A stretch of 63,999 nucleotides of DNA, filler included, from Octopus bimaculoides (taxonomy: Eukaryota), in the NCBI RefSeq assembly GCF_001194135.2. It is 5 parts of 5 records of this genome, joined end to end, with 100 filler letters (N's around TTAATTAATTAA, not from the genome) between each part and the next. Parts side by side here need not be neighbours in the genome. Positions count along the whole stretch, not along the records: positions 61,348 to 63,999 come from NW_026303352.1; 4 more parts are not named here. One strand, written 5' to 3'. How positions within the stretch are numbered: the first letter of the stretch is position 1; the number at the start of each line of letters is the position of its first letter. Below the pieces are notes generated by a model, which saw nothing but the letters and a program-made list of their open reading frames with translations, made no database searches and was not told where the DNA came from. This document shows positions 1-63,999 of the stretch, piece after piece. The position numbers were made by a program, and so were the translations under genes.

Positions 1-97
1 TGTGCATATCTATATACATATATATGGATGTATACATGTACGTATGTATACATGTATATATACATACATTATACGTACATTATATTTATATATGTAT

Positions 98-148
<51 letters not shown>

Positions 149-826
149 GTGTGACTGCATGTAAGCATAATTGTAAACCTGTGGGTATGTGGCTATATAT
201 TCGAATGCTTGCGTATTTATGTGTAAGTGTATATATGTATATATTTTACGCAAATATATGTATTCTATATGATTCTTATTTATAAATATATACATATGCG
301 TGTGTGTGTATGTATGCATATATCTTATGACACATATATACGTACAGATATGCATACATATGTATATATTAAATATATAGACTGCTTTGTAAAGGTATGT
401 CTACTTAGATTTTCTTGTATATCCATACATATTCATGATTTTTTTAGTAATTAATCTGTATGACAATAGGGAAACGCATACCTTCACGTACGTGTGCGCA
501 TGAGCACATGTACGTGTGCGCATGTGCTGGTGCATAATGACTGCGCACATGAATGAGTATAAATATATATATGTGTGTGTATATATATATATATGTGTGT
601 ATTCATATATATGTATATATCAATGAGTGCGTGTATATATATGTATATATCTATATGATTGTGTATATATGTATATATGTATATATCTATATATGTGTGT
701 ATATGTGCATATGTATATATATATATGTGTGTGTACGTACATATATGTATGTATATATACGTGTATGTATCTATGTATGTATTGTATGTATATGTTCGTG
801 TGTGTGCATATTTATAAGTGTGTGTT

Positions 827-871
<45 letters not shown>

Positions 872-2343
872 GTATATATCTACATATGTTTCAAAGTACC
901 CTTACAGACTTTTAAACTATTGTTCTCAAGACGAAAACTTTAAAATTCTATATACATTCAGTATACTTACGTACTCACACACACACACACGTGTGTATTT
1001 AAAAACATGCAAGTATATCATCTATGAATGTATGTATGTATTATCTATGTATCTAGGTATATATATATATATATATACATACATACACATGCATNNNNNN
1101 NNNNCTCTTTTTATCTATATGTATCCATCTTTTTATCTTCCGAAGTTGAACAGCTATCTGTTTTTCGGTTTATCTTCCCATCTCTCTGTCCAGCCATCCA
1201 TTCATGCGTGCAGCTACCCATCTTTCTGTCTAGCTAGATACCAGGGTATCGATCACTCACCCAGCTTCTCCATCTTTCTTCCTCTCCCCCATATATATAT
1301 ATATATATATCTGTGTGTGTGTATGTGTGTGTGTGTGTGTGTGTNNNNNNNNNNNNNNNNNNNNNNNNNNNNNNNNNNNNNNNNNNNNNNNNNNNNNNNN
1401 NNNNNNNNNNNNNNNNNNNNNNNNNNNNNNNNNNNNNNNNNNNNNNNNNNNNNNNNNNNNNNNNNNNNNNNNNNNNNNNNNNNNNNNNNNNNNNNNNNNN
1501 NNNNNNNNNNNNNNNNNNNNNNNNNNNNNNNNNNNNNNNNNNNNNNNNNNNNNNNNNNNNNNNNNNNNNNNNNNNNNNNNNNNNNNNNNNNNNNNNNNNN
1601 NNNNNNNNNNNNNNNNNNNNNNNNNNNNNNNNNNNNNNNNNNNNNNNNNNNNNNNNNNNNNNNNNNNNNNNNNNNNNNNNNNNNNNNNNNNNNNNNNNNN
1701 NNNNNNNNNNNNNNNNNNNNNNNNNNNNNNNNNNNNNNNNNNNNNNNNNNNNNNNNNTTCCACTTTGCCTTTCATCCTTTTATCCTTTCGGGGTATGGAG
1801 GAATAGGTGAGCTCCTCGTTTCATCATGAGGCAAGCGTCCGCAATGTATTCCATGTTATGCCTATCATGCAATTCATATGAAGAGTGATATCATGTAATC
1901 CTTCACGTTGTTCCACTCCAATCAGCTGGCAAAAAAATGAGTAGTACCTGTATTTCAAAGGAGCCACCCTTTTCACACTCTGTGTCACGCTGAATCTCCC
2001 TGAGAACTACGTTAAGGCTACACATGTCTGTGGAGTGCTCAGCCACTTGCACGTTGATTTCACGAGCAGGCTGTTCCGTTGATTGGATCAACTGGAACCC
2101 ACGTCGTCGTAACCGAAGGTGTCACGCAGTGGGACTGAACCAGGAACCATGTGGTTGGTAAGCAAGCTACTTACGACACAACCACTTTGGCGCTTGTATA
2201 TTTATATATTCACATAAACGTATATATGCGTGCATATATAAATATGTATATGTTTGTGTGTATGTTTGTGTGTGTATGCGTGTATGTGACTCTGTGTGTG
2301 TGCGTTTGCACGTGAACATGTGTGCATCTATATAAAAATATAC

Positions 2344-2407
<64 letters not shown>

Positions 2408-2465
2408 GTGTGTATACATTTATATATATCTGCACATATATATGCATACGTACGTATATATATTT

Positions 2466-2519
<54 letters not shown>

Positions 2520-2755
2520 TATATATATATATTAAAAGGCGGGAACGACAAAAATGGCGACTGGCTTCTCATAAAAACAAGCAATAGACATTTACCAAAT
2601 GTTATACCTTTATTTTTAGCAAAATTTTATTTCCTTTATATAGGCACTCATCTGTCCCGACTCTTTTACAGTCTATCCTATATTTGTTTATACATGTGTG
2701 TATATATGTTTTAGTGGAATTGTGATTATGCGTGCACGTATATTTGTTTGTTTTC

Positions 2756-2792
<37 letters not shown>

Positions 2793-2911
2793 TGTGTGTG
2801 TACAAAGTTTTATGATCATTAAGTGTGTTGTAAGATGTTAGAAGTCCTACAGTTGTCTTCTAAAAGAAATAGAAAAAATAGTAGACAAAAAAAATTGTAT
2901 ATAATATGTAC

Positions 2912-2958
<47 letters not shown>

Positions 2959-3594
2959 TAGTTGTATATTTATGCGTATTTATGTTTGTATGTGTGTATC
3001 CATATCTATTTATCAATCGCTCTATCTATCTATCGGTGTACTTGATTCTCTCTCTGTCCANNNNNNNNNNNNNNNNNNNNNNNNNNNNNNNNNNNNNNNN
3101 NNNNNNNNNNNNNNNNNNNNNNNNNNNNNNNNNNNNNNNNNNNNNNNNNNNNNNNNNNNNNNNNNNNNNNNNNNNNNNNNNNNNNNNNNNNNNNNNNNNN
3201 NNNNNNNNNNNNNNNNNNNNNNNNNNNNNNNNNNNNNNNNNNNNNNNNNNNNNNNNNNNNNNNNNNNNNNNNNNNNNNNNNNNNNNNNNNNNNNNNNNNN
3301 NNNNNNNNNNNNNNNNNNNNNNNNNNNNNNNNNNNNNNNNNNNNNNNNNNNNNNNNNNNNNNNNNNNNNNNNNNNNNNNNNNNNNNNNNNNNNNNNNNNN
3401 NNNNNNNNNNNNNNNNNNNNNNNNNNNNNNNNNNNNNNNNNNNNNNNNNNNNNNNNNNNNNNNNNNNNNNNNNNNNNNNNNNNNNNNNNNNNNNNNNNNN
3501 NNNNNNNNNNNNNNNNNNNNNNNNNNNNNNNNNNNNNNNNNNNNNNNNNNNNNNNNNNNNNNNNNNNNNNNNNNNNNNNNNNNNNNNNNNNNNN

Positions 3595-3635
<41 letters not shown>

Positions 3636-3931
3636 ACATTCATATATACATATATATATATATATATATATGTATACATTCATATATACATATATACAGA
3701 TATATACATATATGTATATGTGTGTGAACATGTATTTATTTACACACACGCGTGTGCGTGTATGCATAAATGAATTTGTTCATATATTTATGTGTCTATA
3801 AATGTGTATATATACCTACATATATGTGTATATATACGTGGTTGTATATATATATATAAATACGTGTGTGTGTATGCTTATATATACATACATAAATATA
3901 CTTGTGTGTGTGTACAGAAATTTATGTGTAG

Positions 3932-3982
<51 letters not shown>

Positions 3983-4358
3983 CACACACAACCAACACAT
4001 AAGATCACACGCAAAATCATGCAGGGCTCACGCTCGAACCGTCGATTCATTTATTCCGGTACGAAACAATGGGACAACATGGCGTCAGAATTCACACATA
4101 GTGTAATTCCCTGGGTCATAACCCAGCGCTGTTATAACATTAAGCAACAAGAAATACGACAGAGCAGTTACGATTAGCTTGCATACATCCCTCTTACGTC
4201 TTACCCACCCTCAACGACCCCTGGGAAGCAGCCGATCTTCTCTGGCGTTTTTACGGTGATATTTTGCGATACCGTGTGAATCAGAATGAGGCTTGTTGCT
4301 CCGATCGTCTTATCGCTGCACGCCATTCTATGCTCCCTCATTCTCGGGTTGATGCCGC

Positions 4359-4390
<32 letters not shown>

Positions 4391-4606
4391 ATGTGTATAT
4401 ATATATTGGAACCAACATATATACTTATAGACACATATATGTATATATACATATATANNNNNNNNNNNNNNNNNNNNNNNNNNNNNNNNNNNNNNNNNNN
4501 NNNNNNNNNNNNNNNNNNNNNNNNNNTATACAGGCACATATACATACACACACATGTATATATATATATATATATGTATGCAAATTATCCGAATATGTAT
4601 GAAGAG

Positions 4607-4650
<44 letters not shown>

Positions 4651-5141
4651 CCGTTAATATCTGTGTATGATTAAATGTTAGGAGAAGAGCATATATATAT
4701 ATATTTATGTAGGTTTAATGTACCTCTGTAGAAACAGACATATAGTTAATATCTAAAACACACACACACATACATATAATCATCCACGGACAAACACACA
4801 TACACATGTATACATAATCATACACATTCATATACACACGCGTATGCATCTGTATATATGTGTGTACTTTTTTTTATAACATAACTCTGAATGTATCTCG
4901 TGGACAAATATATAATTCATTGTTGAGATGTCGAAGGTGACACTTTATGTGTGTGTGTGTGTGTATGTATGTGTTTGTGCTTTTTTTTTCTTCTTTAGTT
5001 GAACAAATCAAGTTCTGTAGTTATTTTGCTTTTACCGCCTGATACTTAGTCTGTCGGTCATTTTTTGCCGAACGTCTAAGTTACGGAGACGATCAACACT
5101 AGTTGTGAAGGGGTGCAAGTGAAACAAAGATATGCTCAAAG

Positions 5142-5239
<98 letters not shown>

Positions 5240-5379
5240 GTGGCCTAACAGCCCTCCATGTTTGTTTTCATTGTTTCGGTTTCTCTGTCGTGTTTTCTGT
5301 TTGCAACTTAATTCCTCCGCATCACAAATTTTATTTAATTTGGTCTGCGGGAAGAGCTATTCAAACAATGCGTCCTGCC

Positions 5380-5638
5380 CTAACACTTCGAAACGTTTGG
5401 TTTAGAATAGGGGCAGCTAATGAAGGAAATGTTCTCTATGTGGCCTGTCTGTTTTCCTGTGTGTTCCTGCCGTTGTCCCCCCAAAAGTTTGTTTTCCGTG
5501 CTTTGTTTATGTTCTCGTTTTTCATTTTATCCACGTTTTTTTGTGACGTCCTGTACCCAGATCTGCATCTATATATACATGTAGATGTAGGTATATACAT
5601 ACATGTACGTATATATGCATATACTCACATATTATTTG

Positions 5639-5674
<36 letters not shown>

Positions 5675-7488
5675 GACGGGCTTCTTTCAGTTTCTGTCTA
5701 AGAGATCCATCTACAAAATTTTGGTCAGCCCCAGACCATAGTAGAAGACACTTGCTCAAGGTGCCACGCAGTGGGATTGAAAACCGGAACCATGTGGTTC
5801 GTAAGCAAGCTACTTACCACACAGCCACTCCTACGCCTAGAAAGATATATAAAACAGTACGATGTGATTTGAGGGAGATTTGGCAGCTATATCTAGCAGA
5901 TTTAGCTACCATGTAGAGATCTCCCTCATCGGCTCTTACACACATATATATATATAAATACATACATAAGACAATAGGGTGTGATTTGAGGAAGATTTCG
6001 CTACTATTTCTCGCAGGCTTAGCTACCACGTAGAAATCTCCCTCATTGGCTCATACATACATACATACATACATACATACATACATACATACATACGTAC
6101 ATACATACATACATACATACATACATAAGACTGTAGGATGCGATTAGAGAGGGATTTGGTTGCTATTTCTAATCACGTCTAACTAACACTTACAAAGCAC
6201 CTTCGTATTAATTAACGACGTTATAGCGATAACAGCAGTAGTAGTAGAAGTAGTGGTAGTAGCAGTAGTAATGGTGGTGGTGGTAGTGGTGGTGGTAGTG
6301 GTGGTGGTGGTGTGTCTGCTGTTATTATTTAATGTCGGTGAACTGATGTGCAACAACTGATTGTGTGATGGTGCGTGGCNNNNNNNNNNNNNNNNNNNNN
6401 NNNNNNNNNNNNNNNNNNNNNNNNNNNNNNNNNNNNNNNNNNNNNNNNNNNNNNNNNNNNNNNNNNNNNNNNNNNNNNNNNNNNNNNNNNNNNNNNNNNN
6501 NNNNNNNNNNNNNNNNNNNNNNNNNNNNNNNNNNNNNNNNNNNNNNNNNNNNNNNNNNNNNNNNNNNNNNNNNNNNNNNNNNNNNNNNNNNNNNNNNNNN
6601 NNNNNNNNNNNNNNNNNNNNNNNNNNNNNNNNNNNNNNNNNNNNNNNNNNNNNNNNNNNNNNNNNNNNNNNNNNNNNNNNNNNNNNNNNNNNNNNNNNNN
6701 NNNNNNNNNNNNNNNNNNNNNNNNNNNNNNNNNNNNNNNNNNNNNNNNNNNNNNNNNNNNNNNNNNNNNNNNNNNNNNNNNNNNNNNNNNNNNNNNNNNN
6801 NNNNNNNNNNNNNNNNNNNNNNNNNNNNNNNNNNNNNNNNNNNNNNNNNNNNNNNNNNNNNNNNNNNNNNNNNNNNNNNNNNNNNNNNNNNNNNNNNNNN
6901 NNNNNNNNNNNNNNNNNNNNNNNNNNNNNNNNNNNNNNNNNNNNNNNNNNNNNNNNNNNNNNNNNNNNNNNNNNNNNNNNNNNNNNNNNNNNNNNNNNNN
7001 NNNNNNNNNNNNNNNNNNNNNNNNNNNNNNNNNNNNNNNNNNNNNNNNNNNNNNNNNNNNNNNNNNNNNNNNNNNNNNNNNNNNNNNNNNNNNNNNNNNN
7101 NNNNNNNNNNNNNNNNNNNNNNNNNNNNNNNNNNNNNNNNNNNNNNNNNNNNNNNNNNNNNNNNNNNNNNNNNNNNNNNNNNGTGGTGGTGGTGGTGGTG
7201 GTGGTGGCAGTGCAAGCGGTGACGGTATTCGTGGTGGTGGTGGTGGTGGTGGTGGTGGCAGTAGTAGTAACACAGATGTTCTAGTTGATACCATTGAGTC
7301 GAATGATATAGTAGTGGTGGTGACAGTAGTGGTTGCAGTTCTGACAGTAGTGGTGTTGATTATTGGCCATTTTGGTGATGGTATCGCCGGTGGTAATGAT
7401 GATGATGATAATGATGCTGTTGTTTTTGTTGGTGGTGGTGGTGTTGTTGGTGTTGGTGATGGTAGGACAACTGCTTCTAGCTGATACC

Positions 7489-7533
<45 letters not shown>

Positions 7534-7725
7534 CAAAGAATATATATGCATGTATACACACATATATGTATATACTAACATCTACATGTATATATAGATG
7601 CATATCAGGGTACAGGACGTTAGAACAATGAACTACAGACAACGGAACGAACACATAGGAAAACAGAAAGCCACTTGGAATTATTCATCAGCTGCCTCTA
7701 TTCTAACTAGACGTTTCGAAGATAT
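5380..7725. repeat. Inverted pair of a short repeat (5380-5670 plus; 7480-7725 minus)
   Basis: Shared ttcgaaacgt...ttagaatag(a/g)ggcagct(g/a)atgaa and acgtcctgtaccc...gcatctatatatacatgtagatg blocks, each ending in (TA)n. Confidence 0.75.
5855..6195 (+). repeat. Three tandem degenerate copies of a ~70-bp dispersed repeat separated by (CATA)n
   Basis: Unit gtgtgatttgagggagatttggc.gctat.tctagcag...ctccctcat. Further copies lie near 22945-23010 and 23200-23270. Confidence 0.65.
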
Positions 7726-8027
7726 TTATATACGACGGACTTCTTTCAGTTTCCGTCTACCAAATCCACTCACAAGGTCTTGGTTGGCTCGCAGCTATAG
7801 TAGAAGACACTTCCCCAAGATGCTACGCAGTGGGACTGAACCAGGAACCATGTGGTTCAAATATTTCAATACATATATGTATATAACAAATTTTACTGAG
7901 TGTGTGTGTATACATATTATACATATATATATATATATATATATGTTTGTGTGTATATGTAAATAACTACACATAAATACAATACACACATACATACAAA
8001 CTTATGTATGTATGTATTTGTGTATAA

Positions 8028-8070
<43 letters not shown>

Positions 8071-8099
8071 TCATTGCGTGTTATCGTTTGTAATCAACA

Positions 8100-8460
8100 T
8101 TATGGCGTTTTTTTCCCCCTTTTCTCTATTCAGCAACTATGATATTACATATTTCTAACTTGATGTCAATTTCCTCGCGCCATCTTTCTTTGGAAGCTAC
8201 TTCCGGTCATGGAGATTTCTCATCCTGAATCACTCCATCTTTGTGGGCGGCGAGTTTTCATTGCATCTAATCGGCTTTAAATCCCAGACTCTCGTCTTTG
8301 TTACGAAGGTACCCCGCATCTTTGTTTCAGTGCCATGCACCCTACAACATAAACCTCCCTCGCACATTGTCATCCGCCGTCTCCCCACCCCATCTTCACG
8401 TGAAATGTAGCATTTTCCGTTTGAGAAATAGGGCGAAACTAGAAACACTGTAAAGGTATT
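8100..8460. promoter_or_regulatory. Candidate promoter or non-coding exon island
   Basis: GCCATCTT at 8179-8186, ACTTCCGG (ETS-like) at 8199-8206, GGGCGG at 8245-8250 and CACGTG at 8397-8402. It is unique sequence amid simple repeats. Confidence 0.3.
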
Positions 8461-8700
8461 TTAACTATGGTTTTTCTTTGTAATTTTCATTGTACTTTTT
8501 ATCTTGCTGCAGTGATTAGGTGGCGGCCATGCTTAGACAACGCCTTGACGAATTTTAGTCGAACGAATTGACTTTTTCTTCCGACAAAGCTTGGTACTTG
8601 TTCTATCGGTCTCTTTTGCCCAATCGCTAAGGTGCCGATTGTTAAGCAGTACTGGGAAAACACACCCTCACATATTGTTATGTATGTGTCTGTGCGTGTG

Positions 8701-8778
<78 letters not shown>

Positions 8779-9883
8779 GGCGCAGGAGTGGCTGTGAGGT
8801 AATTATATTCTATGATATTTTATATAATGATATTTGATATTTTATGGTATATATTATATAATATATTCATAGAAGAAATATTTCTTCAAAATACATTAAA
8901 CCAATATATATTAAACTAGTATATCTTGGATAAAAATAGCTCTATAAGAGGTCTGAATATCGTCAGTGACCATATATTTATTTCCATATACGGCAGCTTA
9001 ATTTTATTCGTCCTTAGTCGAAAGACATCTGTTGTGATGTCCTGTTTTATTATTTTTATTGTATTTGTGTAATATTGTTCGTTTCTTTCCGTCCTTGTTT
9101 TTGTATACACTCGCTGCTTTCTTCCAAGGAATCTAATGCTCTTAGCTTAGTTTTTTCCTTGGGGCTGGCCAGATTGGAGCAATATCGAGAATAACCAACC
9201 GAAATTGCAAAGATAATCTGGATCTCGACTGATGAAAGAAAACTCCAAATGACCTGTCCTTGTTTTCTTTGTGTCGTCCATCTGGATGTTTTATCCCTTT
9301 CTTGTATCACCTGTCTGGATGTTTTGCGTTCTTGTCCCATTCTGTATTATATATATATATATATATNNNNNNNNNNNNNNNNNNNNNNNNNNNNNNNNNN
9401 NNNNNNNNNNNNNNNNNNNNNNNNNNNNNNNNNNNNNNNNNNNNNNNNNNNNNNNNNNNNNNNNNNNNNNNNNNNNNNNNNNNNNNNNNNNNNNNNNNNN
9501 NNNNNNNNNNNNNNNNNNNNNNNNNNNNNNNNNNNNNNNNNNNNNNNNNNNNNNNNNNNNNNNNNNNNNNNNNNNNNNNNNNNNNNNNNNNNNNNNNNNN
9601 NNNNNNNNNNNNNNNNNNNNNNNNNNNNNNNNNNNNNNNNNNNNNNNNNNNNNNNNNNNNNNNNNNNNNNNNNNNNNNNNNNNNNNNNNNNNNNNNNNNN
9701 NNNNNNNNNNNNNNNNNNNNNNNNNNNNNNNNNNNNNNNNNNNNNNNNNNNNNNNNNNNNNNNNNNNNNNNNNNNNNNNNNNNNNNNNNNNNNNNNNNNN
9801 NNNNNNNNNNNNNNNNNNNNNNNNNNNNNNNNNNNNNNNNNNNNNNNNNNNNNNNNNNNNNNNNNNNNNNNNNNNNNNNNNNN

Positions 9884-9915
<32 letters not shown>

Positions 9916-9925
9916 GCTACAAAAT

Positions 9926-9956
<31 letters not shown>

Positions 9957-12206
9957 CAGATTGAAAGAACAACAAGTAAACATACGAATGCAGAAGTTAT
10001 CTCGTTATCAATATTTTAGTAAAGTTGATCGACCGAGAACATTACATAGTCACAAACCGTGTCAATTTGTATACACTCGCTCATTTATACACACATTCAC
10101 ACCCTGGTATATATGTAGATGTATATATAAATATACCTATGTTTGCATATTTGCATGTCCATGGAGCGTGTCTATATAAATGTTTAGTATATTTATAAAA
10201 GTATCGCTGACATATACACTAACAAATACGAATACGTACACACACATATATACATACATACATACAAATATACATACATTCATACATATATGTGCGTGTG
10301 TGTATATAATCTATCTATCTATATATATATATATAAACACACATTATATATCTCCACATATATATTTCGAAGCATACATATACACATTTGGATATATATG
10401 TGTGTGTATGTGTCTGTTCGCGTAAATATGTGCGTACTTCTCTAGATATGTGCATTTGTGCATAAACGCACATATGTATGCATGTGTCTGTATGTGTATG
10501 TGTGTGTACAATTTTCGTTATGTGCTTGTGAATGTCTGTGAGTGTGTGATGTATATATATATATATATNNNNNNNNNNNNNNNNNNNNNNNNNNNNNNNN
10601 NNNNNNNNNNNNNNNNNNNNNNNNNNNNNNNNNNNNNNNNNNNNNNNNNNNNNNNNNNNNNNNNNNNNNNNNNNNNNNNNNNNNNNNNNNNNNNNNNNNN
10701 NNNNNNNNNNNNNNNNNNNNNNNNNNNNNNNNNNNNNNNNNNNNNNNNNNNNNNNNNNNNNNNNNNNNNNNNNNNNNNNNNNNNNNNNNNNNNNNNNNNN
10801 NNNNNNNNNNNNNNNNNNNNNNNNNNNNNNNNNNNNNNNNNNNNNNNNNNNNNNNNNNNNNNNNNNNNNNNNNNNNNNNNNNNNNNNNNNNNNNNNNNNN
10901 NNNNNNNNNNNNNNNNNNNNNNNNNNNNNNNNNNNNNNNNNNNNNNNNNNNNNNNNNNNNNNNNNNNNNNNNNNNNNNNNNNNNNNNNNNNNNNNNNNNN
11001 NNNNNNNNNNNNNNNNNNNNNNNNNNNNNNNNNNNNNNNNNNNNNNNNNNNNNNNNNNNNNNNNNNNNNNNNNNNNNNNNNNNNNNNNNNNNNNNNNNNN
11101 NNNNNNNNNNNNNNNNNNNNNNNNNNNNNNNNNNNNNNNNNNNNNNNNNNNNNNNNNNNNNNNNNNNNNNNNNNNNNNNNNNNNNNNNNNNNNNNNNNNN
11201 NNNNNNNNNNNNNNNNNNNNNNNNNNNNNNNNNNNNNNNNNNNNNNNNNNNNNNNNNNNNNNNNNNNNNNNNNNNNNNNNNNNNNNNNNNNNNNNNNNNN
11301 NNNNNNNNNNNNNNNNNNNNNNNNNNNNNNNNNNNNNNNNNNNNNNNNNNNNNNNNNNNNNNNNNNNNNNNNNNNNNNNNNNNNNNNNNNNNNNNNNNNN
11401 NNNNNNNNNNNNNNNNNNNNNNNNNNNNNNNNNNNNNNNNNNNNNNNNNNNNNNNNNNNNNNNNNNNNNNNNNNNNNNNNNNNNNNNNNNNNNNNNNNNN
11501 NNNNNNNNNNNNNNNNNNNNNNNNNNNNNNNNNNNNNNNNNNNNNNNATATATATATATATACGTATATATGTGTATGTATGTACGTAAGTATATATGTA
11601 ACCTGATGATTTTTTGCAATCGCACTATTGTTTCCAAACGCGCGCACACACAAAATAATACAGTGGGTAGTGGTGTCAATGAGACCCAGAGGTGTCAGGT
11701 AATGCTGAATAAGTGCTATGGATAGACCACAGTTAAGCTCTAGGTTCGGTGATTATGTGAATAAGGGGTCCAACGTAGGTCATATATCAGCCTGGGTTTT
11801 TTATTTCATTACTAAAAGTAAATCTTTACATACATATATGTATATATATCATTATACCCATATATTTGTATGTGTGTGTATGTGTTTGTAGATGTATGTA
11901 TATATGTCAAGAAGCGTTTAATGATTTCGGCTGCTTATGTAGATGTTATTTTGGTCTTTCTGGCACACAGACACGCACTCGCATACATGCATGCACACAC
12001 GCTCTCACATACACACACATATATATGTGTGTGCGTATATTGTTGTATGCAAAGCTCTCTTAATGCACTTACTCACACATATAGGTGTTTATTGAGACAC
12101 ACTTAGACAAATACGTATATTCACAGGCACAACACGAACACATAATGGATACACATACAGAAATGCACACAAGCGCACATATCACGCTTGTATAATTGCG
12201 CAAACA

Positions 12207-12237
<31 letters not shown>

Positions 12238-12292
12238 GCGCAGGTACATACATAGAGAGACATAAAAACAGCAGGAGTGTGCAAAGTGAGAT

Positions 12293-12336
<44 letters not shown>

Positions 12337-12479
12337 TTAAGAGAGAAACAAAAGAAAGAATGGAAGAACGTGCGTAAGATAGAAAAAAAAGAAAGAGCGA
12401 CAGAGAGGGGAAATATGCGAGAGAAAAGAGAAAAAGAGGAAAAATCTCACAAAATCTCGATTAATTAAATTTTGGATTG

Positions 12480-12730
12480 ATCGAGAATAACAGCCGCCAT
12501 TTTGGAAATTCTTTTGACGTTAAACTAAGCGACTCAATTGTACAAACTAGTTGACCGTTAGTCATTCGAACTGGCTTGACTTCGCAAATAGCCTGCAGTA
12601 GGTGACCGCTCATGCAAATTACTGTGACGTCATCTTTGTGTTAATTGTCTATCGGTGACTTCATTCTTAATGAACACGTCAACTCGTTTGAAAAGAAGCG
12701 TCTTTTGGAAAATAAAATGGCCGTTCTCTC
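12480..12730. promoter_or_regulatory. Candidate promoter-like CpG-containing island
   Basis: CCGCCATTTT (YY1-like) at 12494-12503, ATGCAAAT octamer at 12612-12619, TGACGTCA at 12625-12632 and AAAATGGCCG at 12714-12723. Motif evidence only. Confidence 0.35.
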
Positions 12731-13147
12731 TCGCTGTTTGGTTTTTGTTTCATTCATTGTGTGTCGTTTGTACGTCTGTCTGTCTGTCTGTCCGTGTTTC
12801 TGTCTGTTCTGTGTCTCACTGTCTCTTCCTTTTGTCTCTCTGTCCTACCTGTCCTTTTGTGTATCTATCTGTCGCCCTCTCTGTCAGTCTGTCTATACAT
12901 ATGTGTGTGTGTGTGTGTGTGTGTATGTGTGTGTATATGTGTGCCTGTGTTTGTTCCCCCAACATCGCTTGACAACCGATGGTGGTGTGTTTACGTCCCC
13001 GTAACTTAGCGGTTCGGCAAAAGAGACCGAGAGAATAAGTACTAGGCTTACAAAGAATAAGTCCTGGGGTTGATTTGCTCGACTAAAGGCGGTGCTCCAG
13101 CATGGCCGCAGTCAAATGACTGAAACAAGTAAAAGAGTAAAAGAGAG

Positions 13148-13193
<46 letters not shown>

Positions 13194-13313
13194 CAGAGAG
13201 AAAAAGAGACAGGGAAAGAAAGGGAGATATATATAGAAAAAGACAGAGAGAAAAAGTGAAGAAAAAGAGCAAGGCAGTTGGGAAAATGAGTGACACAGAT
13301 ACAAAAAGGCAGA

Positions 13314-13385
<72 letters not shown>

Positions 13386-13556
13386 CTAAAAGAAACAGAA
13401 AAACACTTGTTAATACTAATAAAATCGATTGATTTTTCTGTCGCCATGTTTAATATATTTGTGAATGTGTCGTTGTTGTGAAAATAAAATAGTTTTATTA
13501 TTATTTTATAAAATTTCCTTTCCTTTTAATTTTACGGCAAGTTTTCGTCTGTTGCG

Positions 13557-13632
13557 CTTCTTCTTCTTCTTCTTCTTCTTCTTCTTCTTCTTCTTCTTCT
13601 TCTTCTTCTTCTTCTTCTTCTTCTTCTTCTTC
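13557..13632. repeat. (CTT)n trinucleotide microsatellite
   Basis: Uninterrupted run. Confidence 0.95.
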
Positions 13633-13954
13633 CATAGACTGTTTAGGGAGAGTTTCCTTACTTTTTTTTAACCCCCGTTCTTGATATCGGTGTTATTGTT
13701 GTTAAATGCCTTTGTTTCAAAATCCTCCAAAGTGGAATACAACATTTTACAAAAACAACCAATAAGAAAAAAAAATTCTTCTACATTTTGGTAAAAAAAA
13801 TTTTTTTAAATAACATTAAATCCGTTTCTTTAGAATGTTCCGTTGTTATTTATTAATCCAAACGACGATGGAACTTCCGTAAATAATGAGATGGACAAAA
13901 ATAAATAGATATATAAATAATAATAATAATAATAATAATAATGAAAATAATAAT

Positions 13955-14383
13955 AGAGTATTCCTTGCGATCATAATATAGCGGCGAAAGAATTTGACAA
14001 GATCAGTAAATATAAAGACTTGCTAATAGAAATTGAAAAATATGTGGCACCTCAAGGCGACTACCGTACCAGTGATTGTAGGATCTCTAGGAATGATTAA
14101 AAAAAAGGTACTAAAGCCTATTTGAAAATGATATCAGGTTTACCATTCTTACAGGAAGTGCAAAAAATCGTGTTAATTGGAACGACTCATGTACTGAGAA
14201 GAGCATTATCGCTGTGAAAACAACATCCATTCATGAACTTATTTATTTATTAATTTTCTTTTTAAAATACATATTTTACCTGTGGATTTTGCGTGTGTAA
14301 ACTGGGAATGCATACAATGAGCTTCCCTGCCCTAGGTGTACGGAAAACACTCGGCGAGAAATGGAAGAAAATTTTAAGAAAGA

Positions 14384-14436
<53 letters not shown>
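13955..14436 (+). mobile_element. R4/Dong-like 3' fragment (RLE C-terminus) with (TAA)n tail
   Basis: PCDHNIAAKEFDKISKYKDLLIEI...VPVIVGSLGMI...LQEVQKIVLIGTTHVLRRAL*. A fainter DFNIQTN relic follows at about 14470-14640. Confidence 0.8.
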
Positions 14437-14437
<1 letters not shown>

Positions 14438-61247: not shown

Positions 61248-62223
61248 NNNNNNNNNNNNNNNNNNNNNNNNNNNNNNNNNNNNNNNNNNNNTTAATTAAT
61301 TAANNNNNNNNNNNNNNNNNNNNNNNNNNNNNNNNNNNNNNNNNNNNAATAAGTCATGGGGTCGATTTGCTCGACTAAAGGCGGTGCTCCAACATGGACG
61401 CAATCAAATGAGTGAAAAAGTAAAAGAGTAAGTAAATGTAAATTTACCTTTTATGTCGTTCATTCCTAATGAAATACATCTGGTAGATTCTGTTTTAAGC
61501 ATTCATTATTTTCTTATCGCATGCTAATTTGAAATTCTCTTTTCTTTTCCCCTATCGTCTGCCGGTGATTGTGATACAGATTTTTGAGGAGGATCGCTTT
61601 TTGTTCACAAATTTATGATGTTATATAATAAACATTTTGTACCTGGAAGTTCTCTATTTACGAAGTAACTCGCATGAACTATTACAATCTCCTCCCCACC
61701 CTTTTCTTCTTATTGAAACACTGATGACCATCCTTAATTCAATTTCAATATGTAGACGGATATTTTCAGCTGAGCTGGCGATTAGCTCGGTAAAAGAAAG
61801 ATGGACTAAAACAAGCTTAGAGAATGGAATTATAGAATTAACACTTTTAAAATGTATAGTTCAAGTGAATCTTAGTGACAATATCTGATAGAGTAACACA
61901 GGCGCACACACTCACATAAACAAACACACACAAGCCTATAGAGATGCGCGCACACATCGCACAAAATGCAACATTATCTGGGATACAGTGTCGTAAATCA
62001 TTGCGTAAAATTATATATATGCTAGGTTCATTCATTAGAAAATATTTTCGAAACTTATAAATAACGACAAATTCCGCATCTATAAACAATTCCTAACTAG
62101 AGTAGGGATCGGCGACTAACAAAATGCAGTTGTAATCTAAGGAAACTAGCTCAATTAATAAAGGACAAAGAGAGCGTGTTTCACTCCTGAAAACGTGAAG
62201 TTGTTAGAAATAATTACATTAAT

Positions 62224-62668
62224 TAAATCCACCCCTAGGGGTCAGCCACACTTAAGTGACAATATACTTCACTTTATCGTGCAGTTACTGTTAATACTTC
62301 ATTTAGAGAATTAACATTGCTTGTTTTCACCTTTTCGATATCAGTGAAGAATTTCACTGGAAAAGTATACATAAGATTGCCAAGAATTTATCTCTCTCAT
62401 CAAAGATCGGTGGCTATCGGACGCTGACGAAGGGAAATAACCCTGAAACCCGGGTCCGTTCGTGCTACAGATCATGATGGGAGGGATAACTTCCCTTGGC
62501 AAACAGGACACAGTGGTGTGTCGATAAGCCAGCTGGAGGAGATGTCCTCCCGGGGCTAAAAGCAACAGTAACATCCAGCCCTAGGGGTCAGCCACACTTA
62601 AGTGGCAATATACTTCACTTTATCGTGCAGTTACTGTTAATACTTCATTTAGAGAATTAACATTGCTT
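62224..62668 (+). mobile_element. Retrozyme-like non-autonomous retroelement: 346-bp monomer plus 96-bp terminal direct repeat
   Basis: 62227-62322 repeats at 62573-62668 (offset 346, 2 mismatches). The flanks carry the TSD aattacattaat (62212-62223 and 62669-62680). It has an internal hammerhead and no coding capacity. Confidence 0.85.
62410..62468 (+). ncRNA. Type I hammerhead ribozyme, predicted cleavage after GUC (C62456)
   Basis: Core CUGACGA 62424-62430. Stem II is aggg/ccct with loop aaauaa, followed by GAAAC 62445-62449 and GUC 62454-62456. Stem I pairs cggacg/cguucg, plus a further 5 bp beyond an internal loop. All conserved core nucleotides are present. Confidence 0.9.
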
Positions 62669-62984
62669 AATTACATTAATGTTTTTCCTAAAAACAACAT
62701 CGTACTGTTTCTGTACAGCACGATGCAGATGTATTGCATGAGAATGTCTTTAAAATATATCATAATTTCCTCGTTTTGCATCATTTTTACATTATTTATC
62801 CTGACGTTATAGTCTGGCTCTAAGATTTTTTGAATTATTATCCAGTTTATTTTTGGATGTTAATAAATTTGAATATTTCAATGCCTTCTTGTATTGGATG
62901 TGATCACAGCATTAGACGGAAAGAACACAACATAGCACGGTATGTAAAAAATGCCACAGAACAGCTATTATTCAAGTAAGAATG

Positions 62985-63999
62985 TCAGGCTTGTGTTGCA
63001 TGAAAGATTGCAAAGATAACGCAATGTATAATAAATTGAAGAGGAATGAAACTGAAAATAGGTGTGTAAAGTAAACAATGCACGGACAATTTCATAGGGA
63101 TTTTGAAGATAAGACTGACAGAGAAAAAAGATGGCTGTGGATGACTAAAAGTTATTTAAAACCGGAAACGGATGCCCTAATATGTGATCCCAAGAGCAAG
63201 CACTAAGGACAAACTACATAAAATACAGAATGGATAACGCATCAGGAAGTAATAATTGCAGAATTTGTGGAGAAAATGGTGGAACCGTATGGCATATTAT
63301 CAGCCAATGTAAGCCACTAGCCCAGAAGAAATATGAGCCACCATGACAATATAGCCAGGTTTGCCCATTGGGCTGTTTGCAACAAGGATGGACTTGACAG
63401 ACCAAAGAATTGGCACGACCACAAACCGAAGGCATCGTCGAAAATAAAAATGCAAATATCCTATGAGATTTTATGATTCAGTGCGATCATGAGATAGAGA
63501 TTAGGAAGACATACATAGTTTTCATTGAGAAAGAATACAAACTATGCTGGATCTTAGATATAGCATGCCCAGCTGATAACAAGGTATGCGATAAGGAAGA
63601 AAGAAAATTTAAGAGATATGACAGATTAGCTTGGTAAGTTAAGCAGTTGTGGTCGATGAAAACTGTGGCAGTAGTAACAATATTTGTCGGAGCCCTGGGA
63701 ACAGTGAGCAAAAATCTCGAGACGTACTTGGAAAAAATAGGGGCTGCAATAAGGGCGGAGCGTTTGCAAAAAACAGCACTGCTTAGAACCGCCGGAATAC
63801 TCCGTAGGGTGCACGAAAAATATGAGGTGTTACTTTAGTTCACTGCTAGTGAAAAGCTGACACTGCAGTATATCTTCAGCGTTAGAAGCTGTGCAAAGGA
63901 ATTGACAATAATAATAATAATAATGATACTAATAAAAATAGTAATAATAAATAATAAATAATAATAAATAATAAATAATAATAATAATAATAATAATAA
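62985..63999 (+). mobile_element. 5'-truncated R4/Dong-like element, same family as 33835-36830
   Basis: QEQALRTNYIKYRMD, CRICGE, DIACPAD and VGALGTVSKNLETYLEKIG. Its 3' UTR closely matches that of the 33835 copy, and it ends in a (TAA)n-like tail. Confidence 0.88.

What the first reader, a model, noticed from the sequence alone, without database searches (positions are those of the whole stretch)
62212..62680. Retrozyme-like element: 1.28 copies of a 346-nt non-coding monomer with an intact hammerhead and a TSD
Seen: a 96-bp terminal direct repeat at offset 346 with only 2 mismatches, a 12-13 bp TSD (aattacattaat), no ORF, no poly-A, one complete type-I hammerhead, and extra hairpins (62342-62359, 62481-62495, 62535-62550). 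Established: metazoan non-LTR retrozymes are short repeats of a few hundred bp with type-I hammerheads that yield circular RNAs and are thought to borrow an RT from autonomous elements such as Penelope-like elements. Inference: the more-than-one-monomer length is what reverse transcription around a circular RNA would leave, and the near-identical repeats suggest a young insertion. This copy has only one ribozyme, so circle-producing master copies (tandem dimers or longer) should exist elsewhere. I do not know whether this family has been described in cephalopods.
Basis: partly seen in the sequence, partly recalled or inferred. Interest (0 to 1): 0.92.

Follow-up and report, generated by a model that had tools for sequence, protein, structure and literature searches.

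The report
Octopus retrozyme-type insertion with hammerhead ribozyme
This is a young, non-coding, 444-base retrotransposon copy (1.28 repeats of a 346-base unit with a self-cleaving hammerhead ribozyme motif) of the already described animal "retrozyme" kind, seemingly not yet reported in cephalopods; one copy cannot show whether it was copied from an RNA circle.

Summary
Bases 62227-62322 and 62573-62668 match at 94/96, offset 346. A perfect 13-bp target-site duplication (TSD) flanks the 444-nt insert. There is no poly-A and no ORF over 77 aa. One hammerhead motif (62418-62462) has every invariant core base: helix I 6 bp, helix II 4 bp, and a short palindromic helix III (ACCCGGGU) that implies cleavage as a dimer. 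A motif this good is expected about 5e-5 times per unit by chance, but Rfam's models do not recognise it. The unit RNA is predicted to fold unusually stably (z about -6; flanks -2.5 to +1.7), with the ribozyme at the tip of a long stem. Two more copies sit inside Octopus bimaculoides gene models; one shows a compensatory change in that stem. Size, GC content, ribozyme type, self-pairing and TSD fit metazoan non-LTR retrozymes, thought to be non-autonomous dependants of Penelope-like elements (PLEs), which octopus genomes carry. Its inference that more than one unit proves a circular template is not: PLE-type insertions routinely form the same partial tandems. I could not test copy number, tandem arrays or permuted ends, because no cephalopod genome was searchable. 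Verdict: real, a new member of a known kind, of moderate interest.

The parts
62211..62223 (.). Left copy of the 13-bp target-site duplication, TAATTACATTAAT
   Evidence: Exact 13/13 match to 62668-62680. It occurs only twice in the window, against 0.03 expected.
62224..62226 (+). 5' junction filler (TAA; 62227 is ambiguous), not clearly templated by the unit
   Evidence: The offset-346 alignment breaks down here. Extra or microhomology bases at the 5' junction are usual for target-primed reverse transcription (established knowledge).
62227..62321 (+). Partial upstream unit, equal to the last ~96 nt of the unit; this is terminal direct repeat copy 1
   Evidence: 94/96 identical to 62573-62668 at offset 346.
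62322..62667 (+). Full 346-nt non-coding unit, GC 44.5%. Its last 96 nt (62573-62668, the final T shared with the TSD) are direct repeat copy 2.
   Evidence: The circular fold is -117.2 kcal/mol against -83.3 +/- 5.6 for shuffles (z = -6.0, 0/300). The signal is specific to the element: seven flanking windows of equal size give z from -2.5 to +1.7.
62418..62462 (+). Type-I hammerhead ribozyme motif. Helix I is 62418-23/62457-62 (6 bp); core C3UGACGA9 is 62424-30; helix II is 62431-34/62441-44 (AGGG/CCCU, loop AAAUAA); G12AA is 62445-47; helix III is the palindrome ACCCGGGU at 62448-55; C17 is 62456. Predicted cleavage falls between 62456 and 62457.
   Evidence: Descriptor search and chance controls. 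Two copies cofold into a double hammerhead with an 8-bp helix III, -40.9 against 2 x -17.7 kcal/mol. The architecture matches the 'canonical metazoan type I' description in PMC4209133. Rfam does not detect it.
62377..62414 (+). 5' arm of a long imperfect stem that brackets the hammerhead
   Evidence: Pairs with 62464-62502. The duplex energy is -35.5 kcal/mol and it contains a 15-bp helix, 62388-62402 with 62475-62489. The pair 62411/62467 changes compensatorily from U-A to C-G in the O. bimaculoides copy P0001.
62464..62502 (+). 3' arm of the long stem that brackets the hammerhead
   Evidence: The changes 62477 A>G and 62480 G>A, present in both O. bimaculoides copies, keep pairing with their predicted U partners if those are unchanged.
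62342..62359 (+). Local hairpin CAGUGAA-GAAU-UUCACUG (7 bp)
   Evidence: Read from the sequence and present in the circular minimum-energy fold.
62507..62522 (+). Local hairpin GACACA-GUGG-UGUGUC (6 bp)
   Evidence: The one inferred change in P0001 (62515) lies in its loop.
62535..62550 (+). Local hairpin GGAGGA-GAUG-UCCUCC (6 bp)
   Evidence: Read from the sequence and present in the fold.
62668..62680 (.). Right copy of the 13-bp target-site duplication

Best explanation
This is a recent, dead-end genomic copy of a non-autonomous, non-coding retroelement of the metazoan non-LTR retrozyme type. SHOWN: a 346-nt unit is present 1.28 times between perfect 13-bp target-site duplications, with no tail and no ORF. 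It carries one complete type-I hammerhead motif. Its RNA is predicted to be unusually self-paired. Related copies exist in Octopus bimaculoides. INFERRED: master loci hold two or more units in tandem. [quoted passage not shown] A host RtcB-type tRNA ligase closes these into circles. A reverse transcriptase and endonuclease supplied in trans, most likely from a Penelope-like element, nicks the target with a 13-bp stagger and copies the RNA by target-primed reverse transcription. The cDNA here runs across an intact (uncut or re-ligated) cleavage junction and exceeds one unit. So the template was either a circle read about 1.3 times (I put this at about 45%) or a linear multimer or two RNAs joined by template switching, as in PLE pseudo-LTR formation (about 55%). 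With one dimer-dependent ribozyme, this locus cannot release unit-length RNA itself.
For: Geometry and TSD. Hammerhead: all invariant positions are present, helix lengths are 6/4/short-palindromic, and a hit as good is expected about 5e-5 times per unit. The double-hammerhead cofold is favoured. Fold stability: z = -6.0 as a circle and -5.9 as a linear RNA, against -2.5 to +1.7 for the flanks, and the predicted pairs have a mean probability of 0.86. Family: two O. bimaculoides proteins contain translated copies. A0A0L8G4E9 matches at 40 of 49 codons without gaps, and A0A0L8IHK6 is 91% identical over 54 aa. Their inferred nucleotide changes include one compensatory pair, two wobble-compatible changes in the long stem, and hammerhead-compatible changes: G.U to A-U in helix I, C-G to U.G in helix III, and GUC to GUA. 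Literature: retrozyme features are a 150-450 bp unit, GC below 45-50%, a type-I hammerhead, TSDs larger than 4 bp when present, and highly self-paired circRNAs; the mussel unit is 350-390 bp; RtcB circularises the RNA; PLEs are the favoured partner (PMC7229834; preprint 10.64898/2026.07.22.740005). PLE partial tandems and variable TSD length: PMC8557442. Penelope families are present in octopus genomes (PMC13282606 and PMC8967140). Rival architectures were tested and not found.
Against: Rfam's covariance models do not recognise the motif at any threshold tried. It has A10.1-U11.1 where G10.1-C11.1 is the conserved pair. No cleavage, circle or transcript data exist. No tandem array or second full DNA copy could be retrieved, so copy number, master loci and end positions are unknown. 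The two octopus copies are known only as protein translations, so the nucleotide inferences rest on minimal-change codon logic. One of them has lost U4 of the core. No PLE sequence was available for comparison. The 30-40-bp 'tail' often seen at PLE insertions is absent.
Confidence: 0.75

Rival explanations
1. This is the reader's specific version: the insert is the direct footprint of reverse transcription running about 1.3 times around a ribozyme-made, ligated 346-nt RNA circle, primed at an internal position on the circle.
For: It is the published life-cycle model (PMC7761336, Fig. 2 legend). The insert is longer than one unit. Its ends (62224 and 62667) do not coincide with the cleavage site, and the cDNA crosses an intact 62456|62457 junction. 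The RNA has the highly self-paired fold typical of retrozyme circles. The target duplication's best match on the whole circle is the segment where the insert ends, but this is marginal and post hoc.
Against: PLEs and their non-autonomous derivatives produce the same partial tandems without any known circle, including clades that lack hammerheads (PMC8557442). This ribozyme depends on dimers, so transcripts with one copy would stay linear and uncut. The register of the target/3'-end similarity does not fit simple primer annealing. One locus cannot discriminate between the models.
Confidence: 0.35
2. This is a SINE-like short retroposon mobilised by a LINE (for example an RTE, CR1 or Dong-R4 element) that happens to carry a hammerhead, like the Schistosoma SM-alpha elements.
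For: A 13-bp TSD is in the usual LINE range (established knowledge). LINEs dominate octopus genomes. A decayed LINE lies 500 bp downstream. Cervera & de la Pena leave LINEs open as possible partners.
Against: There is no A-rich or microsatellite tail. There is no tRNA-, 5S- or 7SL-like head. The unit's 3' end shows no significant similarity to the neighbouring LINE's 3' end (192 of 1000 shuffles score as well). A partial tandem is characteristic of PLEs rather than LINEs.
Confidence: 0.1
3. The hammerhead-like motif is a coincidence, and the element is an ordinary structured or unclassified repeat with no ribozyme biology.
For: Rfam detects nothing. The 10.1-11.1 pair is non-consensus A-U. A genome of 2-3 Gb should hold a few hundred chance motifs of this quality (rate). 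One octopus copy has lost U4.
Against: Only about 5e-5 such motifs are expected per 346-nt unit. The motif sits at the tip of a strong stem in an element whose size, composition and insertion style all match known hammerhead elements. Its helix III is an 8-nt palindrome, as the dimer mechanism requires. In the P0005 copy all readable core positions are kept and the cleavage triplet changes only to another allowed one.
Confidence: 0.07
4. The structure has a DNA-level origin: a local tandem duplication, a relocated piece of a satellite array, or an LTR-type miniature element (TRIM or plant-style LTR retrozyme).
For: It has direct terminal repeats of 96 nt.
Against: A perfect 13-bp TSD sits exactly at the ends of the periodic sequence. 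LTR integrases make 4-6-bp TSDs. There are no TG…CA repeat ends, no PBS and no PPT; the hammerhead is outside the terminal repeat; there are no terminal inverted repeats. Copies exist elsewhere, in O. bimaculoides.
Confidence: 0.03

Closest known systems
Metazoan non-LTR retrozymes (Cervera & de la Pena 2020, NAR, PMC7229834), especially the Mytilus galloprovincialis family with 350-390-bp units
   Same: Both have a non-coding unit of a few hundred bp (346 here) and GC below 45-50% (44.5% here). Both carry one type-I hammerhead per unit and have a predicted highly self-paired RNA. TSDs are larger than 4 bp when present. Both occur in molluscs and coexist with PLEs in the host genome.
   Different: This locus is a dispersed 1.28-mer with one ribozyme, not a tandem array. 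There are no expression or circle data. Helix III is short and palindromic (dimer-dependent), whereas most invertebrate retrozyme hammerheads are reported to have a stable helix III. It has an A10.1-U11.1 pair. No cephalopod family is described in the papers held here.
Amphibian retrozymes / newt satellite 2 (units of about 330-350 bp; Epstein & Gall 1987; Forster et al. 1988, as cited in PMC7229834 and PMC4209133)
   Same: The unit size is nearly the same. The type-I hammerhead has a very short palindromic helix III and cleaves efficiently only as a dimer. Here the double-hammerhead cofold is favoured.
   Different: The host is a vertebrate, and the copies form huge tandem arrays (up to about 120,000 copies in the axolotl). 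No sequence similarity was tested.
Penelope-like elements and their non-autonomous derivatives (pseudo-LTR partial tandems; Craig et al. 2021, PMC8557442; Li et al. 2026 preprint, 10.64898/2026.07.22.740005)
   Same: The insertion has a 5'-truncated copy directly upstream of a full copy. TSD length is variable. There is no poly-A. The hammerhead is type I with a palindromic helix III. Non-autonomous forms make pseudo-LTRs and head-to-tail copies.
   Different: There is no RT or GIY-YIG ORF. The unit is only 346 nt. The hammerhead has the canonical 6-bp helix I and 4-bp helix II rather than the 'minimal' PLE form (helix II 6-8 bp, helix I 4-5 bp). No 30-40-bp tail is present. Similarity to an octopus PLE could not be tested.
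Plant LTR retrozymes (Cervera et al. 2016, PMC4918200)
   Same: These are also non-autonomous, non-coding elements that carry hammerheads and are thought to spread through circular RNA.
   Different: The plant elements have type-III hammerheads inside ~350-bp LTRs, a PBS, a PPT, 4-bp TSDs and Gypsy partners. None of these features is present here.
Schistosoma SM-alpha hammerhead-bearing SINE-like repeats (own knowledge; cited as ref. 15 in PMC7229834)
   Same: These are short (~335 nt), dispersed, non-coding repeats with a type-I hammerhead whose loop 2 (AAAUA-like) and short helix III resemble this motif.
   Different: They are a platyhelminth family described as SINE-like. The comparison is from memory only and was not tested.

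Membership tests
Metazoan non-LTR retrozyme | A type-I hammerhead with a complete catalytic core in each unit | tested here: met
   A descriptor match has C3UGANGA9, G12AA, A15.1-U16.1 and C17, with helices of 6 bp, 4 bp and a short palindrome. The chance rate is about 5e-5 per unit. Caveats: Rfam finds nothing, and the 10.1-11.1 pair is A-U.
Metazoan non-LTR retrozyme | A short non-coding unit (about 150-450 bp) with low GC (below 45-50%) | tested here: met
   The unit is 346 nt with GC 0.445. No ORF exceeds 77 aa, and that ORF has no relatives other than copies of the repeat itself.
Metazoan non-LTR retrozyme | Tandem arrangement, dimers to multimers, giving at least two ribozymes per locus | tested here: not met
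   This locus has 1.28 units and one ribozyme. It corresponds to the 'monomer/solo' derivatives of Li et al. 2026. Whether tandem masters exist elsewhere could not be tested.
Metazoan non-LTR retrozyme | An RNA predicted to be highly self-paired | tested here: met
   The circular minimum free energy is -117.2 kcal/mol, z = -6.0 (0/300 shuffles), with 62% of bases paired. The signal is specific to the element. One compensatory pair is seen in a second copy.
Metazoan non-LTR retrozyme | Multi-copy, dispersed family in the genome | tested here: inconclusive
   Two further copies were found, only as translated pieces inside O. bimaculoides gene models. No cephalopod genome could be searched, and the search route misses short ORFs.
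Metazoan non-LTR retrozyme | Self-cleavage and accumulation of linear and circular unit-length RNA | not testable with these tools
   This needs in vitro transcription of a dimer, northern blots or RNase R treatment, or RNA-seq junction reads.
Metazoan non-LTR retrozyme | Coexistence with autonomous PLEs in the host | not tested
   Literature only: Penelope families are reported in O. vulgaris, O. bimaculoides and other coleoids. The window's species is not known to me.
Penelope-like element insertion (autonomous) | An ORF with a telomerase-like RT and a GIY-YIG endonuclease | tested here: not met
   The insert has no ORF over 77 aa. The neighbouring coding remnant is a LINE with CCHC and restriction-enzyme-like motifs, not a PLE.
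PLE-dependent non-autonomous element | A partial tandem (pseudo-LTR), a TSD of variable length and no poly-A | tested here: met
   The layout is a 96-nt 3' part, then the full 346-nt unit, then a 13-bp TSD, with no tail. Any 1.28-mer can be written this way, so the test is weak.
PLE-dependent non-autonomous element | Sequence similarity to an autonomous PLE (3' end or pseudo-LTR) | not testable with these tools
   No octopus PLE sequence or repeat library was available.
LTR retrozyme / TRIM | TG…CA LTR ends, PBS, PPT, a 4-6-bp TSD and the ribozyme inside the LTR | tested here: not met
   The repeats start ATCCA… and end …TTGCTT. No PBS or PPT is present, the TSD is 13 bp, and the hammerhead lies outside the terminal repeat.
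LINE-dependent SINE | A pol III-type head (tRNA, 5S or 7SL) and a LINE-like or A-rich/simple-repeat 3' tail | tested here: not met
   ARAGORN finds no tRNA. Rfam finds no small-RNA family. There is no tail. The 3' end is not similar to the neighbouring LINE.

The most novel reading that the evidence does not exclude
The TSD-flanked 1.28-mer is a direct genomic footprint of target-primed reverse transcription running more than once around a ribozyme-made circular RNA, primed at an internal site chosen by similarity to the target. A young cephalopod family of such copies, with circularly permuted ends, would let genome data alone settle how animal retrozymes move.
Probability: 0.3. Interest if true: 0.6.

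Novelty: new member of a known kind. Interest (0 to 1): 0.38.

Why it matters
Animal retrozymes are abundant producers of small circular RNAs, yet how they are copied back into DNA is still inferred rather than shown. Most described copies sit in tandem arrays whose insertion borders are lost. A young, dispersed copy with exact borders (perfect 13-bp TSD, 2% repeat divergence) shows three things. Insertion happened by a staggered-nick, target-primed route. The template carried an intact cleavage junction. The cDNA exceeded one unit. If the octopus family has many such copies, plotting where their 3' ends fall on the unit would separate a circular template from a linear one with a fixed 3' end. 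Comparison with octopus Penelope elements would test the proposed partner. It would also extend retrozymes to cephalopods, where only uncharacterised Rfam 'hammerhead 1' hits have been noted (giant squid, PMC6962438). On present evidence it adds a member to a known class, not a new mechanism.

Tried and rejected
1. **Rfam.** I ran it on the whole piece and on 101-nt and 61-nt ranges at E up to 10. No hammerhead family appeared, only chance hits (freshwater-2, ClpQY_promoter, sR24).
2. **Six-frame pseudo-protein searches of the unit**. Only P0001 was returned. The candidate list saturated at 8000 and missed the known relative P0005, so this route undercounts short ORFs.
3. **Exhaustive phmmer with the 77-aa ORF**. 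P0005 is genuine. P0006 is a false positive: its locus L003 is an unrelated 58-nt satellite with no DNA similarity to the unit.
4. **Exact look-ups.** Three window ORFs, P0001 and P0005 are not on record, so neither the source contig nor the octopus DNA copies could be fetched.
5. **DNA pattern scans.** One scan of viral contigs and two of JGI metagenome contigs gave 0 matches.
6. **Loci L001, L002 and L004**, reached through the neighbouring LINE remnant, share only that LINE (68-72% nucleotide identity for L001 and L002). L001 and L002 were searched for the unit and hold no copy. L004 (1 kb) was not searched for the unit.
7. **Rival architectures were rejected.** There are no LTR/TRIM features, no terminal inverted repeats, no tRNA-derived SINE head, and no similarity between the unit's 3' end and the LINE's 3' end.
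8. **Similarity between the TSD and the insert's 3' end** is marginal (33 of 5000) and post hoc, and its register does not fit simple primer annealing. I did not use it as evidence.
9. **The minimum-energy fold of the isolated 63-nt ribozyme segment** is not the hammerhead fold and is unremarkable (z = -0.3). This is expected for a dimer-dependent motif and argues neither way.
Full report
**What is in the sequence.**
- Bases 62227-62322 recur at 62573-62668, 346 nt downstream, with 94 of 96 identical. The differences are at 62232 (C/G) and 62259 (A/G).
- The periodic stretch is bounded by two perfect copies of TAATTACATTAAT, at 62211-62223 and 62668-62680.
- That 13-mer occurs nowhere else in the window, against 0.03 expected. 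The chance of such a match is about 4.5e-8 per register.
- The insert is therefore 62224-62667: 444 nt, or 1.28 units.
- Homology to the unit runs right up to the right-hand duplication, with one ambiguous T. Three or four unassignable bases (TAA[A]) sit at the left junction.
- A precise 3' junction and an untidy 5' junction are what target-primed reverse transcription of a plus-strand RNA usually leaves (established knowledge).
- There is no poly-A or simple-repeat tail and no tandem array. No ORF exceeds 77 aa.

**The ribozyme.** Rfam 15 reports no hammerhead on the piece or on 101-nt and 61-nt ranges, even at E<=10. I therefore tested the motif against the defining features with an explicit descriptor. 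There is exactly one hit on either strand:
- helix I: CGGACG/CGUUCG (62418-23 / 62457-62, 6 bp);
- core: C3UGACGA9 (62424-30);
- helix II: AGGG/CCCU with loop AAAUAA (62431-44, 4 bp);
- G12AA (62445-47);
- helix III: the palindrome ACCCGGGU (62448-55), so A15.1-U16.1 plus one or two more pairs;
- C17 at 62456, with cleavage predicted between 62456 and 62457.

None of 3000 random pieces gave a hit as good. In 2 x 30 Mb of composition-matched random sequence only 2 arose. That is about 5e-5 per unit, or a few hundred per octopus-sized genome.

The layout is what Cervera & de la Pena (PMC4209133) describe as the canonical metazoan type-I hammerhead: 6-bp helix I, 4-bp helix II, and a 1-2-bp helix III capped by a small palindromic loop. 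That design prevents cleavage by a single copy and allows it when two copies pair. Two copies of the segment do cofold into a double hammerhead with an 8-bp helix III, at -40.9 against 2 x -17.7 kcal/mol.

Two things count against the motif: Rfam's failure to find it, and the A10.1-U11.1 pair where G-C is the conserved state.

**The RNA as a whole.**
- The 346-nt unit has 44.5% GC, against 32-38% in the flanks.
- It folds to -117.2 kcal/mol as a circle, against -83.3 +/- 5.6 for dinucleotide shuffles (z = -6.0, 0 of 300).
- Seven flanking windows of the same size give z from -2.5 to +1.7, against -5.9 for the unit as a linear RNA.
- The fold is well defined; the predicted pairs have a mean probability of 0.86.
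- The hammerhead sits at the tip of a long imperfect stem, 62377-62414 pairing with 62464-62502. This stem has a duplex energy of -35.5 kcal/mol and includes a 15-bp helix.
The third segment pairs within this long stem instead.

**Relatives.** No eukaryotic genome collection was available, so I searched protein collections with translations of the unit. Two Octopus bimaculoides entries contain copies:
- The first ~75 residues of the 'anion exchange protein' A0A0L8G4E9 match the minus strand. The match is ungapped over 49 codons (62403-62549), with 40 identical.
- The 54-aa 'uncharacterized protein' A0A0L8IHK6 is 91% identical to the unit's 77-aa ORF.

So the unit is not single-copy and occurs in octopus. 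Because the DNA is non-coding, each amino-acid difference fixes a nucleotide change:
- In the first copy, 62411 U>C and 62467 A>G are predicted partners, so U-A becomes C-G, a compensatory change.
- Both copies carry 62477 A>G and 62480 G>A, which keep pairing with their U partners if those are unchanged.
- Within the hammerhead, the changes are G.U to A-U in helix I, C-G to U.G in helix III, GUC to GUA (an allowed triplet), one change at 16.2, and in one copy U4>C, which should kill that copy.

This is suggestive support only, since it is drawn from translations. A third apparent relative, P0006, is a false positive from an unrelated 58-nt satellite.

**What it is.** Unit size, GC content, type-I hammerhead, strong self-pairing, lack of coding capacity and a TSD longer than 4 bp are the listed features of metazoan non-LTR retrozymes (PMC7229834). 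The described mollusc family, in the mussel, has 350-390-bp units. The feature not met at this locus is tandem organisation with two or more ribozymes. This copy corresponds to the 'monomer/solo' derivatives counted by Li et al. (2026 preprint).

The rival architectures were tested and not found. There are no TG…CA ends, PBS or PPT, and the ribozyme is not inside the terminal repeat, so it is not an LTR retrozyme or TRIM. There are no terminal inverted repeats. There is no tRNA-like head, no tail, and no similarity to the neighbouring LINE's 3' end, so it is not a typical SINE.

**How it most likely works.** The following is inferred from the literature on this class.
1. Tandem master copies are transcribed.
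2. Adjacent hammerheads pair and release unit-length RNA.
3. An RtcB-type ligase circularises that RNA.
4. A reverse transcriptase and endonuclease supplied in trans, with PLEs as the favoured candidate, inserts cDNA at staggered nicks.

Penelope families are documented in octopus genomes.

This locus adds three facts: the stagger was 13 bp, the template carried an intact cleavage junction, and synthesis exceeded one unit.

It is not the only reading. PLE insertions, and those of non-autonomous derivatives, characteristically form a 5'-truncated copy upstream of a full copy (a pseudo-LTR), even in clades without hammerheads (PMC8557442). Any 1.28-mer can be written that way. I put a circular template at roughly 45% and a linear multimer or template switch at roughly 55%, within an overall 0.75 confidence for the class assignment.

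**Age.** The repeats show 2 differences in 96 nt and the TSD is perfect. The calibration quoted for octopus repeats is a Jukes-Cantor distance of 0.09 for about 25 My (PMC13282606). On that scale about 1% per copy suggests an age of the order of 3 My, with very wide Poisson limits, provided both differences arose after insertion.

**Novelty and limits.**
- In the library searched, no paper describes retrozymes in cephalopods.
- The giant squid genome paper lists 235 Rfam 'hammerhead 1' hits without analysis.
- This is a new member of a known kind.
- The decisive family-level tests (copy number, arrays, distribution of insertion ends on the unit, partner similarity, empty site) need a cephalopod genome search that these tools do not offer. 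RNA-level claims need experiments.

Noticed in passing
window 63150-63838 (+), with tail 63907-63999: This is the decayed 3' part of a non-LTR retrotransposon ORF: one reading frame with 5 in-frame stops. It has a CCHC-type motif (CRICGENGGTVWHIISQC) and restriction-enzyme-like endonuclease-type motifs, and is followed by an (AAT)n array (29.7 copies). Pfam finds nothing. Its relatives (45-66% aa identity) are in ENA assemblies ERZ25066843, ERZ26692762 and ERZ27264738. The TAA-repeat tail and the motifs suggest the Dong-R4 clade, which is abundant in octopus; this is from own knowledge and was not tested. It is not a PLE.
   Followed up: partly
UniProt A0A0L8G4E9_OCTBM (P0001) residues ~1-75; A0A0L8IHK6_OCTBM (P0005): Two Octopus bimaculoides gene models are built partly or wholly from the antisense strand of this repeat. 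One is the N-terminal exon of an anion-exchanger model; the other is a 54-aa 'uncharacterized protein'. They are likely annotation artefacts or exonised repeat copies.
   Followed up: partly
window 62655-62664 compared with 62211-62223 / 62668-62680: The target-site duplication resembles the insert's own last bases (AATTAACATT against AATT-ACATT). This is the best match of the TSD anywhere on the unit. Only 33 of 5000 random flank 13-mers do as well. The register does not fit simple primer annealing, and the similarity remains unexplained.
   Followed up: partly
window 62698-62725: An imperfect 10-bp hairpin (CATCGTACTGT…ACAGCACGATG) lies about 20 nt downstream of the insertion site, under the weak chance Rfam hit 'freshwater-2'. 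Its z-score of -1.85 is not remarkable.
   Followed up: yes
window 61348-61420 and 61890-61960: The piece begins with a GC-richer stretch (…GGGGTCGATTTGCTCGACTAAAGGCGGTGCTCC…) that may be the end of another repeat cut by the piece's edge; the first 346-nt window folds with z = -2.5. Further on is a CA-rich, microsatellite-like tract. Neither was examined.
   Followed up: no
L003 (ENA ERZ25084518, ctg232022), 1-15572: The whole 15.6-kb contig is a 57-58-nt satellite whose orientation flips at about 7665 and again near 8772 and 8983. Its translation (P0006) gave a spurious low-complexity match to the element's ORF. It is unrelated to the finding.
   Followed up: yes
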